Numbered from the stretch's first letter, positions 25,753-52,209 are shown. The stretch is DNA of 64,000 nucleotides from Octopus bimaculoides (GCF_001194135.2 NC_068994.1:1124248-1188247); one strand, 5' to 3'. Notes: generated by a model from the sequence alone, not told the origin. Translations and numbers: made by a program.

Positions 25753-25835
25753 TCACAAGAAGGGTTTCATATATGAGTCTTGATGTTGCTTCTTATCACT
25801 GGAACCTGGTGTGGGGCGTTTGAAATCATAGAGTG
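25753..25835 (-). CDS. Pcdh: Protocadherin terminal coding exon 3: (A)LYDFKRPTPGSSDKKQHQDSYMKPFL*
   Basis: Strong acceptor ttctctgtttctttgcAG|CA in phase 1, matching the exon-2 donor. The frame is open to TGA, which is followed directly by in-frame TAA and TGA. 181+83 nt is a multiple of 3. Confidence 0.7.
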
Positions 25836-26988
25836 CTGCAAAGAAACAGAGAATGATTGTTATGATGGGTCTTGGAGACAATACAGAAGAAAAGCAATTT
25901 CTTAAGAAAAGAATTAGATTCATTTTGAAGACACATAAAAACACAGAATGTTCAGAAATGATGGTGTGAAGATGCAGCAACAATATTTACCAATTCTAGC
26001 ATTATTTGAATGATGTTCTGGAAGGATTCAACGTCTCTCATAACTTATCAAAGTCTCTTCAGAAGTGATTCATCTTAGTCCACTTGTATTAATTATAAAC
26101 TGATTGATAGATGTTCCTTCAATCACCATAATCATTATTAGTTTAGTCACCAGTCCGTTGTCATTTTGTTAGTTTCTCAGCCAGCTTCTGCCCATCGTTA
26201 TAGCCATTTGGTATTGCTATGTTGAAAATACAACATGTAAGATCGCATGTGGCTCATGTGCTAACTGGTGACCTGTTTGGGTGTCAAAGAGCCACAGAAC
26301 TATCACTGAATCATCTTGTCAAGCAAGAAAGAGATTAAAGGAGTGCCCGAGAGTATTTTGTTGAAGAAACTAAAGTTGGAGAGTGAGGTATATGTGGAGA
26401 AGATTTATTTTATTATCGTGTCTCCAAATACATTTTGTCAGAGCTAGAGTGGGGCATCTTGATAAAATAGGATGTCTCATTGCAAAAAAAAAATGGACCA
26501 CAAAAGGAACAGTTGTCCTCTCTAAGATTTAGTGATGTTCAGGGTGAGGGGTTCATCAAATGACCCTAAGCTAATGGGGCTTTGGTCAATGATATCCCAG
26601 TCATAAGTATCCCATCTGTTCAGCAGGCTGAGTGTATCTAGGATTACATCATGCTATGTGTCTTCCTTTTCCAGCAGTAGCACTTGGCTGTGTCCAGTGG
26701 ATCAAGTGACAACATTGAAACTCTGTTGTTGGTTTAAACATCACCTCGTTAAACCAGTCAAAATACAACTATATCACACCCAAGACATCCAAATTCCCAT
26801 TGAAGCTGCAGAAAGAATCCTTGGGATTTTGAGGATGAAGTTTGTTTTTTAATTAAGAAATACACATTACATATTATAATAACAGATCCAAATTGCATGC
26901 AGCCAATTGGTTACTATAGCAATGCAAAACGACCCTTTATACATATACAAAACTACGGGGCAGAGAAGCCAGCTAACAACACTTTTAC

Positions 26989-27036
<48 letters not shown>

Positions 27037-28970
27037 CAAATATATTTTTATGTATGTGTAAATGTGTGTGTGAGAGAGAGAATTAATTATTTGCTTGTGT
27101 GTATAAATTGATGTAAACCAGTGCCCAGTGTTGTGTCCCTTTATGTCAAAATGTAACTGGTGTCTCTCAGGTGTCTCTAAGCCATGAGTTGTGGTTTAAA
27201 AATCCTCACAAGATCGTTTGAGCATCTCTTACTCATTAAGGTGGACGAGTCTGTAACACCGCTGGCCCCAATCTACCAGAAAGCACACTGAAGTGAGAAA
27301 CCTTTAGAAGACAGAATCATATTTGGAGTTGCGTCCCTTGCTTATACCAACCCATATCAAAAAATATGGCATCTTTTACAGCACAGAGTTTCAGAATTTT
27401 TCTGGCATTTGTGCTAAAAATTTACATGGTTTTGCTTTCCTTACTACTTTGCAACACTCTGGTGCCACATAGAGGAACTATGTAATTGTGATGAGAACTT
27501 CTCTACCAAACAGAAGCCACGCCTGTACAAGGGAACATAACATTAATTGTTTAATGTCTTCCTAATTAGTTATACAATAGTTTAATTATTTTGGGGATGG
27601 TATCATATCTGGATAAATTTAAATGGCAATTAAATTTAAGGATTCTTTAAACTGGGATGAAGGGGATTTGTTTCTTAGGATTGTGACATAATGAAATTCA
27701 AATTGACTATACATACACACACATGCACACACGCACAGACATACAGGCACAAACACACACGCACAATATATGCATGCATACATACTAACACAAAAACATG
27801 TTTGTGTGTGTATGTATGTGTATAAGCGTTCGTACGTCACAGACACCGTTCTCTGGACTCCTAGGCCACCGTAGTCAAAGTAACTGATCTCTTTGTCACA
27901 TTCGTGGTAATATTTCGCCTCCTGAAATTCTCATTTAACTTCACTTTAATTGTTTGGTGTAGAAATGAAATAGAAACAATTTGTTAATGTTTCTATTTTA
28001 AAACTCTGCAGGTGAGAGGTGTAATCTACCTATTATTATCAAACCGACGAATCAGTTGTTTCTGGTCAATGGTGTAAGGGAGGCAACTCATGGTCTCTTA
28101 ACACTCTAAAATGCTCGAACGGCCTGAAATAATTTATCGTGAGAGTCTTTGGGAGATGTCACAGTTACGCTACTTTGGCAACACCACTGACCACATAGGT
28201 GGATATCCATCGGCTAGAAATGACAGCAAAATCTCCCTCAAATCGTGCGTGGTATAAGGACGATATATTTTTACGTATTTCTAGTATTGGTGTTTATTCT
28301 GTTAGAGGGGCTGGTTGATATTCTAATTCTAAATATGCTTTATTGGGTCTGTTCGTGCAGTTGCTCAGAGTATTTCTTATGAGGTTAGAATATTCTTGGT
28401 AGGAAGAATTAATTTGATTAATTTATTGAAATATCAGTATATTTGTTGTTGAATTTTTTTTGGTTAATACCCCAAAACGTAAACAAAAACTGACGAAATG
28501 GTCACATTAGGAGCGTCTATTTGATAAGGGTTCATCTATGGAATCTTTAATAGTGTTTCCAAAGGAATATTATCATAAGAGTAAAAGAAAATTTGTGTGT
28601 TTGTGTAATGCAAGGCCATTTATTCATGTGTACAGACGTATCTGTCTTTCTGCACAGGATGTGACACGCTAGCATTTACGCAACAAATTCTCTCCCTTAT
28701 GCATACCTGTCTATTTATACATACATGTGTGTGTGCGCGCGCGCTCGAGTGTATGTGTGTATTTGCTACCCACCACAACTTATTGACTGGGGTTCGTGTA
28801 TTTTTGTCCTTGTAACTTTGCAGTACAACAAATGAGACTGATGGAATAAGAACCAGATTTGAAGATAAAACTGGGGTTGATTTATTCAACTAAAATTCTT
28901 CAAGGGGATGCTCTAGCATGGCCACAGTCTACTGATCTCAACATGTGAAAGAAGAAATATATATTATAGA

Positions 28971-29048
28971 CGCAGGTGTGGCTGTGTGGTAAGAAACTTG
29001 CTTCCCAACCATATAGTTCCGAGTTCAGTCCCACTGCATGTCACCTTG
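28971..29048 (+). mobile_element. tRNA-SINE head fragment
   Basis: gtggctgtgtggtaagaaacttgcttcccaacc...gagttcagtcccactgcatgtcaccttgg, same family as 53014 and 57051. Confidence 0.75.
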
Positions 29049-49604: not shown

Positions 49605-49658
<54 letters not shown>

Positions 49659-49778
49659 CAGAAGTAGACTTTGTGTTATGTCACAATAGCATGGACAGTT
49701 GTAATACCTAATCTTACAACACAACAGAATAATTAATCAATTGAAAGACATGTTTAATAATCAACAGAAATTGTTTAC

Positions 49779-52181
49779 CTTTGATGCTTTTGGAAATGTT
49801 TTCACAATTGTTGGCGTCATCCATTCCTTCTGTGATTCTTCTTCAGGATAAAACTGACTCCTAGATTTTATTGATTGGTCATCATTGTCTGCTATTTCTT
49901 CTGGGTTCCTCGTTATCATACCTGCAGTGTTTGCTTGGTAAATCAACTGTTTCATTTCAGTTCGGGACCGATAGTGTGGGTTGTCACCGGTCCTTGTCGT
50001 TACATTTCGGCCATTTTGGCTCCTAACAATGCATGTTGTGATGAAGATAACTATCGCTATGGAAACTACCACTGCTATTATTACGATGATAATCACTAGA
50101 TTGATATCTATCATCTCACCTGATTGGACTTGAACTGCTGTCAACATTGTTGATGTCTTATTACTAACTGTCAGTGTTAACGAGACTGTTGTCATGGCTG
50201 ACAAAATGGGACTGCCACTGTCCTTCACAACTAATTTAAGATTATAAGCCCCTGCATCGTTTTGGTAGACGGTGCGAGAGAAGGATAAGACCCCTGTGTA
50301 AGGATTGACCCCAAATAACTGTTTGTCGTTGCCCTTAAGTATTCCATATTTAAGAAATGCATTTTCACGAGTGTCCCTGTCAACAGCCCTCAGCACTGTG
50401 ATGTCATTCTTGCTTTGAGGATAATAATGGACATCAAGACTAAAGGGGTCAACACTAGGGAACGTAAAATAAGGGGCATTGTCGTTTTCATCGACAACTT
50501 CAACAACAACATTTGCTGTGTTGTTTAATGGAGGGACTCCACTGTCTCTGACAAAAACCTGGAATTTGTAAATATTCTGTTCTTCCCGATCTAAGGCTTT
50601 TGTCGTTGAAATAAATCCATACTCAGTTATCTGGAATGGGAAAGCATTGTGCTTTTTATTGAGAAGAGAATAAACCAGCTGACCTCCTGACCCCAGATCA
50701 GGGTCAACAGCACTTATAAAACCAACTGGAAAGTTGGCTGTTTCAGTCTCATAAGTCAAAAACTTAAAAGTCTCCTTGATAAACTTAGGCTGGACGTCAT
50801 TAACATCCTGAACTTTGATAGTAAATACTTTTCTTGATTGTAAAGGTGGAGAGCCGTTATCTCGGCAGTTAATCCTAATCTCATACTGGCTGCTCACTTC
50901 TCTGTCAACGGAACCTTTCATTGTTATTTTATATTCTTTTGCAGCCAAACTAAGAAGCTGAAACTTCTCGTGTTTCATTTCACAGTTAACCTCTCCATTC
51001 CCTCCGTTATCATTGTCAATGACCATGACGTAAGCAATAAAACTGCCTACTTCAATATCTTCTGAAATTACTGTCGTATTTTCTTTCAATCCAGACACAA
51101 AATCTACATCTATTGTTGGTGGATTGTTTCTTTGATTAATGATATTAACGAGAACCAAAGCAGATGCACTTAACGATGGGCTTCCACCATCAACAGCTTC
51201 GACAAACAGCTTGTATGTTTGTTTTTGTCCATGGTCAAACATTTGCTGTACGGAGATTTCTCCATTGTATTGATTTAAACGGAAATGGTTTCGATCAACA
51301 TCTAAAGTCTTTGGACTGAAGTGATACATAACTTTACCATTTTCATCAGAATCTAAATCTGTTGCTGACACTGTAATGATTGGTCTGTCCTTTCTGTAGG
51401 AACTCTTTATGGAAATATTGTAGATACTTTTAGAGAAAAATGGTAGATTGTCATTTACATCAATGACAAATATTTGAATTTTTAACACCCCTTGTTTGGG
51501 AGGTGAACCTCCATCTGTGGCAATCACTTCTAAAGCATAATTATCTTTTACTTCTCGATCAAGTTTCTCTTCCAGGAGAATTCCCAGTTTAGATTTCCCC
51601 CCAATTCGTTCCGATACTGCTAACGAGAATGGTTCATTTTTGTTTTTTTTCAACCTGTAAGTTATTTGAGAATTTAATATGCCAACGTCTCCATCGACGG
51701 CATTAGGGATTGGTTTCGTGGTCCCTTTACCATCAGTTTCATCAAACTGAAGATTAAATTGTGTACTTGGGAACTCTGGCTGGTGATCGTTAACATCTTT
51801 TATAATTACTTTAATCTTGAGAATCTTCATAAAAGTCTTTGCCTTACGAACTGCCACTTTGACAATCACTGAACACTCCTTGTTGTAGAGGCACAGGGAC
51901 TCGGTGTCCAATGTGCCAGCCGTGTAGATCTCTCCAACTTTTGTAATGTTAAATTGTTGAGTCTCTCTTCTCTGAAGCTGGCTGAATTGGATTAAATTAT
52001 AGTCTTGAGCTGAAATAGTCTCCAGCAGTTGTGAATCGACAGCAATATTACCAAGATAGGTGCCAGGACTTTTGCCTTCCTCAACGTGATAAACGAGATC
52101 AACACAAAGTGTGCTGTGAAACAACAGGATTAAAAGACTGGTTTGTCTGAGCATATTGTCATTGTTTTCTTTGTAGAACAT
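49779..52181 (-). CDS. Pcdh: Protocadherin, large ectodomain exon (signal peptide, EC1-EC6, TM, proximal cytoplasmic tail); coding exon 1
   Basis: 806-aa ORF with repeated cadherin motifs (DVNDHQPEF, DVNDNLPFF, DVNDVQPKF, DENDNAPYF; LDRE/VDRE; AxDxD; DGG/DNG/DSG). Signal-like segment MLRQTSLLILLFHSTLC (second Met, 52154), TM LVIIIVIIAVVVSIAIVIFITTCIV, no classical-cadherin Trp2. The ORF runs through a phase-0 donor AAG|GTAAAC at 49779|49778, so the last 5 residues (VNNFC) are probably intronic. Confidence 0.97.
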
Positions 52182-52209
52182 CAGGACGAGGTATCAAGTG
52201 TTCCTGGAA

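What the first reader, a model, noticed from the sequence alone, without database searches (positions are those of the whole stretch)
25753..52203. Hidden three-exon protocadherin: cytoplasmic exons 12 kb and 24 kb downstream of the ectodomain exon
Seen: donor AAG|GTAAAC (49779, phase 0), then acceptor ttttccAG|CAG (37739, phase 0), donor GCAG|GTAATT (37559, phase 1), acceptor tctttgcAG|CA (25835, phase 1), and a triple stop TGA TAA TGA. All phases match and both small exons are open. The spliced product is 888 aa from Met1 or 879 aa from Met10. An ORF-only annotation would give a wrong C-terminus (VNNFC). Established: cephalopod protocadherins have one large ectodomain exon plus small cytoplasmic exons.
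Basis: partly seen in the sequence, partly recalled or inferred. Interest (0 to 1): 0.75.

Follow-up and report, generated by a model that had tools for sequence, protein, structure and literature searches.

The report
Annotated three-exon octopus protocadherin gene

Summary
Every coordinate, splice phase and length in the finding checks out. The minus-strand exons are 52181..49779, 37739..37559 and 25835..25753, and they splice to 888 aa. That product is 100% identical to O. bimaculoides XP_014775143.1 / UniProt A0A0L8H5Q7 ("putative protocadherin beta-18 isoform X1"). The window is identical to chromosome CM046614.1 of GCA_001194135.2. The gene is therefore not hidden.

The same three coding exons, with conserved splice sites, occur in O. 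vulgaris, O. sinensis and Argonauta hians. Against Argonauta, the introns are unalignable apart from two short non-coding blocks, and the exons stand out as conserved islands.

All five assembly gaps are intronic. Their flanks are colinear in the gap-free O. vulgaris locus, which fills them with simple repeats.

- Exon 2 has a conserved CAGCAG tandem acceptor, giving products with or without Gln802.
- Two shorter isoforms are annotated: exon-2 skipping (823 aa) and an alternative terminal exon at 48883..48842 (815 aa).
- A conserved acceptor 22 nt upstream of the ATG implies an upstream 5'UTR exon.
- Exon 2 ends in a YEEI motif shared by many octopod paralogs.
- The small exons are private to this gene, not shared constant exons.

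No read-level RNA data could be reached.

The parts
49779..52203 (-). Large exon. It holds 22 nt of 5'UTR (52203..52182), the ATG at 52181..52179, and 801 codons encoding the signal peptide, six to seven cadherin repeats, the TM helix (residues 693-719) and 82 juxtamembrane residues. The donor is AAG|GTAAAC (phase 0).
   Evidence: (Pfam Cadherin 4e-74, Cadherin_2, CELSR2-like 9th domain). It is 82% nt identical to Argonauta over 2.46 kb.
52204..52225 (-). 3' splice acceptor (pyrimidine/ATT-repeat tract + CAG) immediately upstream of the large exon. It implies at least one upstream non-coding 5'UTR exon, which was not located.
   Evidence: AG|GAACACTTGA is conserved in all four species, while the sequence upstream of it diverges in Argonauta. 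RefSeq lists three protein accessions for the identical 888-aa O. bimaculoides product, which may reflect UTR variants (inference).
37740..49778 (-). Intron 1 (12,039 nt). It contains assembly gaps 49482-49491 and 45652-45747, the alternative terminal exon, and a conserved non-coding block at 47980..47748.
48839..48883 (-). Alternative terminal exon (acceptor ttttatAG), coding FHHIQTIQRPFDGY + TGA. It gives the annotated 815-aa short-tail isoform (XP_052828882.1 and others).
   Evidence: It is present in three Octopus species and was not found in Argonauta.
37559..37739 (-). Coding exon 2 (181 nt, phase 0 in, phase 1 out). It encodes QPKSKM...GDYEEIHNMA, including Y854-E-E-I. A tandem CAG|CAG acceptor allows an alternative start at 37736, which drops Gln802.
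   Evidence: The O. sinensis isoform X2 (P0001, 887 aa) lacks the Gln. The exon is 88% nt identical to Argonauta, with conservation collapsing about 50 nt into each flank.
25836..37558 (-). Intron 2 (11,723 nt). It contains gaps 35577-35778, 33833-33842 and 31279-31404, and a conserved non-coding block at 29616..29470.
25753..25835 (-). Coding part of exon 3: the last two bases of the split Ala codon, 26 codons (LYDFKRPTPGSSDKKQHQDSYMKPFL) and the TGA stop. TAA and TGA follow at 25752..25747.
   Evidence: It is 96% nt identical to Argonauta. All 3 differences are synonymous in this frame and change the peptide or lie past the stop in the exon-skipping frame.
23671..25752 (-). Probable 3'UTR (about 2.08 kb) ending at a conserved AATAAA (23676..23671).
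   Evidence: The block 23824..23647 is conserved with Argonauta and O. vulgaris and contains AATAAA. This is an inference; no RNA ends were seen.

Best explanation
This is the Octopus bimaculoides protocadherin gene already annotated as 'putative protocadherin beta-18' (XP_014775143.1, UniProt A0A0L8H5Q7) on chromosome CM046614.1.

Ordinary spliceosomal splicing joins three coding exons. A 2.4-kb exon encodes the signal peptide, cadherin repeats, transmembrane helix and juxtamembrane stretch. A 181-nt exon lies 12 kb downstream and an 83-nt terminal coding exon lies a further 11.7 kb on. Together the two small exons supply the last 87 residues of the cytoplasmic tail. The two small exons belong to this gene alone, so whole genes were duplicated in the octopus family, not variable exons in front of shared constant exons.

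Tail diversity comes from three sources: a tandem CAG|CAG acceptor (with or without Gln802), exon-2 skipping, which reads exon 3 out of frame, and an alternative terminal exon 0.9 kb into intron 1.

Shown: the structure, identity to the annotation, conservation and purifying selection.
Inferred: that the 888-aa form is the principal functional product; that an upstream 5'UTR exon exists; and that the conserved YEEI at the end of exon 2 is a phosphotyrosine docking site, which the short isoforms lack.
For: - The spliced translation equals P0124 (XP_014775143.1/-44.1/-45.1, A0A0L8H5Q7), and locus L001 (GCA_001194135.2 CM046614.1:1140000-1186428) is identical to the reverse complement of the window stretch it covers (46,429 bases).
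- Orthologues of 888 aa (O. vulgaris, O. sinensis) and 887 aa (Argonauta hians, 86% id) are colinear over 100% of the length.
- tblastn maps three coding exons in each of the four loci. All donors and acceptors, including the CAGCAG, are conserved.
- O. bimaculoides versus Argonauta blastn leaves only the exons and a few short blocks alignable.
- Exons 2+3 show 25 nt differences, distributed 6/2/17 over codon positions. Fifteen codons are synonymous-only and 9 non-synonymous.
- The gaps are intronic and filled by simple repeats in O. vulgaris.
- Isoforms P0126 (exon-2 skip) and P0125 (alternative exon at 48883) were reproduced from the window.
- The closest paralogue, P0004, lies 108 kb away on the same strand. 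It has its own exon 2 and exon 3 at what appear to be the homologous intron positions (protein junctions).
- No other protocadherin large exon is in the window.
- Literature: octopus PCDH genes are multi-exonic (PMC6339937, citing Albertin 2015). Cephalopods do not splice multiple first exons to shared final exons (PMC9068888).
Against: - No read-level RNA evidence could be reached. Neither further protein search returned a fragment of this gene, whether from a transcript assembly or any other source: one found nothing and the other only paralogues and more distant relatives. No Logan contig carries the exact 888-aa product.
- The public models are pipeline predictions, so the relative abundance of the 888-, 887-, 823- and 815-aa forms is unknown.
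- The 5'UTR exon was not located.
- The role of the YEEI motif is untested.
Confidence: 0.93

Rival explanations
1. The main product is a short-tailed protocadherin. Transcripts either terminate in the alternative exon at 48883..48839 (815 aa) or skip exon 2 (823 aa), and the 888-aa form is minor.
For: Both short forms are annotated in O. bimaculoides, O. vulgaris and O. sinensis and were reproduced from the window. The alternative exon has a good acceptor. Vertebrate alpha-protocadherins also make long, short and tail-less cytoplasmic isoforms (PMC7339444).
Against: The alternative exon was not found in Argonauta, whereas exons 2 and 3 are strongly conserved there. All three exon-3 substitutions are synonymous in the full-length frame; in the skipping frame two change the peptide and the third lies after its stop. 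So selection acts on the 888-aa frame. No expression data either way.
Confidence: 0.1
2. The gene ends with the large exon (intron retention, beta-protocadherin-like truncated tail ...KASKVNNFC), and the downstream 'exons' are chance open segments.
For: The uninterrupted ORF does end 18 nt after the donor. Thousands of open AG..GT segments exist downstream by chance.
Against: The read-through peptide is not conserved (VNNFC, VSNFC, VS*). The donor GTAA is conserved. The downstream segments are conserved islands with third-position-biased substitution. They are homologous to the tails of paralogues, and the spliced product matches independent annotations.
Confidence: 0.02
3. Exons 2 and 3 are shared 'constant' exons, as in vertebrate alpha/gamma clusters, spliced to several upstream variable exons.
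For: The architecture (large exon followed by distant small cytoplasmic exons) looks like the vertebrate clustered locus. The genes lie head-to-tail on one chromosome.
Against: There is only one large exon in the 64-kb window. The nearest paralogue, 108 kb upstream, has its own, different exons 2 and 3 within 8.3 kb. No other protein among the 126 retrieved by the full-length search and cluster look-up carries this tail, except this gene's own isoforms and orthologues. PMC9068888 states that cephalopods do not use shared final exons.
Confidence: 0.02

Closest known systems
Octopus bimaculoides 'putative protocadherin beta-18 isoform X1' (XP_014775143.1; UniProt A0A0L8H5Q7) and its orthologues in O. 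vulgaris (CAI9733563.1), O. sinensis (XP_029644550.2) and Argonauta hians (GAB1604055.1)
   Same: The O. bimaculoides entry is the identical protein and the identical locus. The orthologues are 97% (Octopus) and 86% (Argonauta) identical, with the same three coding exons and splice sites.
   Different: Nothing for the O. bimaculoides entry. The orthologous genes span 53.0, 50.8 and 35.6 kb instead of 26.4 kb, because their introns are larger.
Vertebrate clustered protocadherins (alpha, gamma): one large variable exon plus three constant exons
   Same: One large exon encodes the ectodomain, the TM helix and the start of the tail, and small downstream exons encode the rest of the tail. Alternative use of the tail exons gives long, short and tail-less forms (PMC7339444).
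   Different: The small exons here are private to one gene and there are two coding ones, not three shared ones. Diversity arose by whole-gene duplication (PMC9068888). The tail sequence is unrelated, and no vertebrate cytoplasmic Pfam domain was hit.
Vertebrate non-clustered (delta) protocadherins
   Same: They are stand-alone genes. By my own recollection, not checked here, they also have a large first coding exon, gene-specific small cytoplasmic exons and alternatively spliced tails. PMC7339444 covers this group but was not read on this point.
   Different: No [RK][VI]xF (PP1) motif is present in this tail. PMC6339937 reports that the vertebrate CM1-CM3 motifs are absent from octopus protocadherins.
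Octopod protocadherin paralogues (e.g. P0004, 'protocadherin beta-15 isoform X1', 60% identical)
   Same: The closest paralogue, P0004, appears to have the same exon plan and intron positions, judging from its protein junctions and approximate tblastn exon boundaries. Paralogue tails share exon-2 blocks ((Q)xYSQPxxVTS, NYxSDT, W, YEE[IL]P).
   Different: Apart from those short motifs, tails are only 15-40% identical. This gene has His instead of Pro after YEEI and an N-terminal PKSKM extension shared only with P0004.

Membership tests
Protocadherin (non-classical cadherin superfamily) | Six or more tandem extracellular cadherin repeats after a signal peptide | tested here: met
   Pfam Cadherin (E 4e-74, five stretches), plus the N-terminal Cadherin_2 domain and a CELSR2-like domain at 589-655. 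The hydrophobic leader MLRQTSLLILLFHSTLC is visible in the sequence.
Protocadherin (non-classical cadherin superfamily) | Single transmembrane helix followed by a cytoplasmic tail without the classical cadherin catenin-binding domain | tested here: met
   There is a hydrophobic stretch at residues 693-719. No Cadherin_C or other cytoplasmic Pfam family was hit at E <= 0.01.
Protocadherin (non-classical cadherin superfamily) | Whole ectodomain and TM encoded by one unusually large exon (Wu & Maniatis 2000, cited in PMC7339444) | tested here: met
   An uninterrupted 2,403-nt coding exon, 52181..49779.
Vertebrate-type clustered protocadherin locus (variable exons + shared constant exons) | Several variable exons spliced to the same downstream constant exons | tested here: not met
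   There is one large exon in the window. The neighbouring paralogue has its own small exons. The tail is unique to this gene among 126 relatives. PMC9068888 says the same for cephalopods.
Delta-protocadherins | Conserved cytoplasmic motifs CM1/CM2 (and CM3 RRVTF in delta-1) | tested here: not met
   No [RK][VI]xF in the 169-residue tail. CM1 and CM2 were not scanned here; PMC6339937 reports them absent from octopus PCDHs.
Octopod expanded protocadherin family (Albertin 2015 set of 168 multi-exonic genes) | Location on the protocadherin-rich chromosome, close similarity to other octopod PCDHs, small exon encoding the ...YEE[IL](P) tail module | tested here: met
   It lies on the same 60.6-Mb record as the other O. 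bimaculoides hits with a contig on record, at 50-60% identity to dozens of paralogues. The YEEI module aligns with 25 non-redundant paralogues.

The most novel reading that the evidence does not exclude
The Tyr-Glu-Glu-Ile(-Pro) motif at the 3' end of exon 2 is the one strictly retained element in otherwise fast-diverging octopod protocadherin tails. It matches the high-affinity ligand of the Src SH2 domain (pYEEI, PMC2888578).

The reading would be that exon 2 is a signalling cassette: a phosphotyrosine docking site for a Src-family kinase. Alternative splicing (exon-2 skipping or the alternative terminal exon) would switch it off, giving adhesion-only receptors. This would be a convergent counterpart of the Fyn-binding tail of vertebrate alpha-protocadherins (noted in PMC6339937).

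I found no paper linking YEEI and protocadherins, and the published octopus motif table lacks it.
Probability: 0.2. Interest if true: 0.5.

Novelty: already known. Interest (0 to 1): 0.12.

Why it matters
For the scan, this is a positive control. A reader working from raw sequence recovered a three-coding-exon eukaryotic gene model across 26 kb and five assembly gaps, exact to the base. It adds nothing to the public annotation, which has carried this 888-aa product in RefSeq and UniProt.

Biologically it illustrates the established point that cephalopods expanded protocadherins by duplicating whole multi-exon genes rather than by vertebrate-style variable/constant exon splicing.

The small by-products may be useful to anyone studying octopus protocadherin signalling, but none is surprising. 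They are:
- the conserved tandem acceptor of exon 2;
- isoforms that remove the tail;
- the family-wide YEEI motif, which sits on a separately spliced exon;
- two conserved intronic non-coding blocks.

Tried and rejected
1. Transcript evidence. A protein search with the 169-aa tail found no candidates. A search with the last 409 aa returned only paralogues and vertebrate protocadherins, with no fragments of this gene. The exact-product look-up found only the genome record, with no transcript-assembly contig, and the O. sinensis X2 product was not on record. Junction usage therefore could not be checked at read level.

2. Albertin et al. 2015 (PMC4795812) is not held. Its statements are cited second-hand from PMC6339937 and PMC9068888.

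3. Conserved intronic block 29616..29470 as an RNA gene or exon. It has stops in all six frames, no fold stability beyond shuffles (z +0.6 and -0.5) and no Rfam family anywhere in the window. It is left as an unexplained conserved non-coding element.

4. A hidden coding exon inside the assembly gaps. This is rejected, because the gap-free O. vulgaris locus fills them with simple repeats and the orthologous proteins have no extra residues at the junctions.

5. Other protocadherin pieces in the window. There is only one 26-residue hit, with an in-frame stop, at 14724..14801 (+), to an atypical C-terminal extension of P0033. It is not part of this gene.

6. The Pfam families PF28399 and PF28393 listed in the precomputed columns are faint or weak Ig-like overlaps on cadherin repeats. 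They did not reach E 0.01 in the local Pfam scan and were ignored.

7. The invariance of Y-E-E in alignment A1 is partly circular, because I chose tails that contain the motif. The unbiased figure is 75 of 126 relatives with [YF]EE[IVL]. Many of the rest carry variants (YETLP, YDEIP, FDDLP) or are short isoforms.

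
Full report
**Observation**

On the minus strand the window holds one long ORF, 52181..49761 (806 aa), ending ...KASKVNNFC*.
- AAG|GTAAAC after 49779.
- ttttccAG|CAG, with exon 2 starting at 37739.
- GCAG|GTAATT after 37559.
- tctttgcAG|CA, with exon 3 starting at 25835.
- TGA TAA TGA at 25755..25747.

Exon 1 CDS is 2,403 nt (phase 0). Exon 2 is 181 nt (phase 1). Exon 3 contributes 80 coding nt plus the stop. The joined CDS translates without interruption to 888 aa, with Met1 and Met10. 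The introns are 12,039 and 11,723 nt.

Splice signals and open frames alone would not have picked this model:
- In the 28.8 kb downstream of exon 1 there are 2,702 open, phase-0 AG..GT segments of 60-300 nt.
- Only seven have a pyrimidine-rich acceptor and a GTAA/GTRAGT donor.
- Two of those seven are exon 2 with its two acceptors.

The proof has to come from homology.

**Identity of the locus**

A search with the spliced protein returned more than 6,000 relatives; all the named hits in the listed top 120 are octopod protocadherins. The best hit is an O. sinensis protein at 97% identity and 100% coverage, followed by an Argonauta hians protein at 86% and 100% coverage.

The 90% cluster of the top hit contains the following:
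- O. bimaculoides XP_014775143.1/-44.1/-45.1, which is UniProt A0A0L8H5Q7, 'putative protocadherin beta-18 isoform X1', 888 aa.
- An 888-aa O. vulgaris/O. sinensis orthologue.
- Isoforms of 823 and 815 aa in all three Octopus species.

The window's spliced translation is identical to the O. bimaculoides entry. The public locus of that protein (GCA_001194135.2, CM046614.1:1,140,000-1,186,428) is base-for-base identical to the reverse complement of the window stretch it covers (46,429 bases), Ns included. The gene is therefore already annotated in RefSeq and UniProt. It is not hidden.

**Assembly gaps**

All five gaps inside the finding lie in the two introns, so no exon or reading frame crosses one. 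The public record of this locus is the same assembly and carries the same gaps (L001 holds 2,868 Ns), so I used the gap-free orthologous loci instead (O. vulgaris L003, O. sinensis L004 and Argonauta L002 hold no Ns).

The 400-bp flanks of every gap map colinearly onto O. vulgaris and O. sinensis. For four gaps, the O. vulgaris sequence between the flanks is 134-364 bp of (GGT)n, G-rich repeat or (TA)n/(TG)n, with nothing protocadherin-like in any frame. For the fifth gap (33833-33842), the two flank matches overlap within a (TA)n run. The orthologous proteins have no extra residues at either junction. The gaps are collapsed microsatellites and do not affect the model.

**Comparative evidence that the small exons are real**

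tblastn places three coding exons in all four loci. The donors (AAG|GTAA., GCAG|GTAATTAGC) and acceptors are conserved in all four, including the CAGCAG at exon 2 and .GCAG|CACTCTATGA at exon 3.

Between O. bimaculoides and Argonauta the introns do not align. What remains, in colinear order, is:
- Exon 1, at 82% identity.
- A 233-bp block at 47980..47748.
- Exon 2 with about 45 nt of each flank, at 88%.
- A 147-bp block at 29616..29470.
- Exon 3.
- Two blocks downstream of the stop.

Ungapped identity drops from 0.84-0.96 in the exons and their immediate splice regions to 0.2-0.4 within 50-100 nt.

Fifteen codons differ only synonymously and nine non-synonymously. The last 39 residues are identical in Octopus and Argonauta.

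The read-through peptide after the exon-1 donor is not conserved: VNNFC*, VSNFC*, VS*. These are the signatures of coding exons under purifying selection in exactly this frame.

1. The exon-2 acceptor is a tandem CAG|CAG, conserved in all four species. O. sinensis isoform X2 (887 aa) uses the distal AG and lacks Gln802. Variation of ±Gln at the same junction recurs among paralogue models.

2. The 823-aa isoform is exon-2 skipping. Joining 49779 to 25835 reads exon 3 in another frame and ends ...HSMISNAPHQVPVIRSNIKTHI*, identical to XP_052828881.1.

3. The 815-aa isoform uses an alternative terminal exon at 48883..48839 (ttttatAG|TTCCAC..., FHHIQTIQRPFDGY*), 0.9 kb into intron 1.
 - That exon is present in the three Octopus species but was not found in Argonauta.
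 - The three exon-3 substitutions between Octopus and Argonauta are all synonymous in the full-length frame. In the skipping frame two change the peptide and the third lies after its stop.
 - Selection therefore acts on the 888-aa form.

4. Twenty-two nt upstream of the ATG there is a pyrimidine/ATT-repeat tract and CAG|GAACACTTGA. The AG and the following bases are conserved in Argonauta, while the sequence before them is not.
 - This is a 3' splice site, so at least one non-coding 5' exon lies further upstream. I could not locate it.

5. A conserved block at 23824..23647 contains AATAAA (23676..23671). This suggests a 3'UTR of about 2.1 kb. It is an inference.

**Family context and mechanism**

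The protein has a leader peptide and cadherin repeats (Pfam Cadherin E 4e-74 in five stretches, plus Cadherin_2 and a CELSR2-like domain). It has a TM helix at residues 693-719 and a 169-residue tail with no Pfam match.

The window holds no second protocadherin large exon. The closest paralogue (P0004, 60% identical) lies 108 kb away on the same strand. It has its own exon 2 and exon 3 inside an 8.3-kb gene, at what appear to be the homologous intron positions (protein junctions). No other relative among the 126 from the full-length search and cluster look-up carries this gene's tail. This agrees with the literature:
- Octopus has 168 multi-exonic PCDH genes (PMC6339937, citing Albertin 2015).

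The plan of a large exon plus small tail exons is the general protocadherin plan (Wu & Maniatis 2000, via PMC7339444). Alternative tails have a vertebrate precedent in the A/B/O isoforms of alpha-protocadherins (PMC7339444).

**The tail motif**

Of the 126 relatives, 75 have [YF]EE[IVL] in the last 160 residues, nearly always YEEIP. In this gene and, from its protein junction, in P0004, the motif lies at the very end of exon 2. Several proteins end right after it.

In an alignment of 26 non-redundant exon-2 peptides (15-40% identical to the query), only Y-E-E is invariant. That set was chosen for having the motif, so the 75/126 figure is the unbiased one. Many of the others carry YETLP, YDEIP or FDDLP variants.

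A profile of this module found only 31 hits with E <= 0.001 among 1.84 billion cluster representatives. Those I looked up and that carry names are Octopus or Argonauta, apart from one cuttlefish fragment in which the Tyr is replaced (HREEM). An unnamed transcript-assembly cluster has HIDEMP at that position.

pYEEI is the high-affinity ligand of the Src SH2 domain (PMC2888578), and vertebrate alpha-protocadherin tails bind Fyn (noted in PMC6339937). No paper in the library pairs YEEI with protocadherins, and the published octopus motif table does not list it. A phosphotyrosine docking role, removable by the exon-2-skipping and alternative-terminal-exon isoforms, is a reasonable hypothesis but entirely untested.

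**Limits**

I could not reach read-level RNA data. Neither further protein search returned a fragment of this gene, from a transcript assembly or any other source, and no transcript-assembly contig carries the exact product. The support is therefore threefold:
- Gene models for this locus in four species, from at least two annotation sources.
- Cross-species conservation of exons and splice sites.
- The substitution pattern.

Isoform proportions, the 5' exon and the poly(A) site remain inferences.

**Verdict**

This is the already annotated O. bimaculoides protocadherin gene. It is an ordinary member of the octopod expansion, with private cytoplasmic exons. Novelty: already known. Interest is low.

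Noticed in passing
window 29470-29616 (-), inside intron 2: A 147-bp non-coding block, 85% identical to Argonauta and 97% to O. vulgaris (where it is present twice), in an otherwise unalignable intron. It has stops in all frames, no stable fold and no Rfam hit. It contains a GTAAGT and a TTTCAG, both conserved. Function unknown; an enhancer or a splicing element are guesses.
   Followed up: partly
window 47748-47980 (-), inside intron 1: A 233-bp block, 75% identical to Argonauta and 98% to O. vulgaris, single copy, with no open frame. It is a second conserved intronic non-coding element.
   Followed up: partly
window 23647-23824 (-): A conserved block about 2 kb after the stop codon with AATAAA at 23676..23671. 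It is the probable polyadenylation signal of the gene.
   Followed up: partly
window 21542-21690 (-): A 149-bp block, 82% identical to Argonauta, flanked by (ATG)n/(CAT)n repeats. It lies beyond the putative poly(A) site and was not found in the O. vulgaris stretch fetched. Unexplained.
   Followed up: no
L003 47895-50797 and 51166-54009 (O. vulgaris), corresponding to window ~31238..29047: O. vulgaris carries a tandem duplication of about 3 kb of intron 2. Overall the gene spans 53.0 kb (O. vulgaris), 50.8 kb (O. sinensis) and 35.6 kb (Argonauta), against 26.4 kb in O. bimaculoides, all through intron size.
   Followed up: partly
window 25756-25835 (-), exon 3: Exon 3 is 96% identical at nucleotide level to Argonauta, well above exon 1 (82%) and exon 2 (88%). 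The extra constraint could reflect splicing signals or the second reading frame used by the exon-skipping isoform, but the three changes seen do not preserve that second frame.
   Followed up: partly
window 14724-14801 (+): A 26-residue tblastn match, with an in-frame stop, to the C-terminal extension of an atypical 1,162-aa O. bimaculoides protocadherin model (P0033). It is probably a repeat or a pseudo-fragment.
   Followed up: no
window 52204-52260 (-) and many other places: A long (ATT)n microsatellite forms the pyrimidine-poor 'tract' in front of the large-exon acceptor in Octopus species, whereas Argonauta has a T-rich tract there. (TA)n, (TG)n and (GGT)n runs border nearly every assembly gap in the window.
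   Followed up: no
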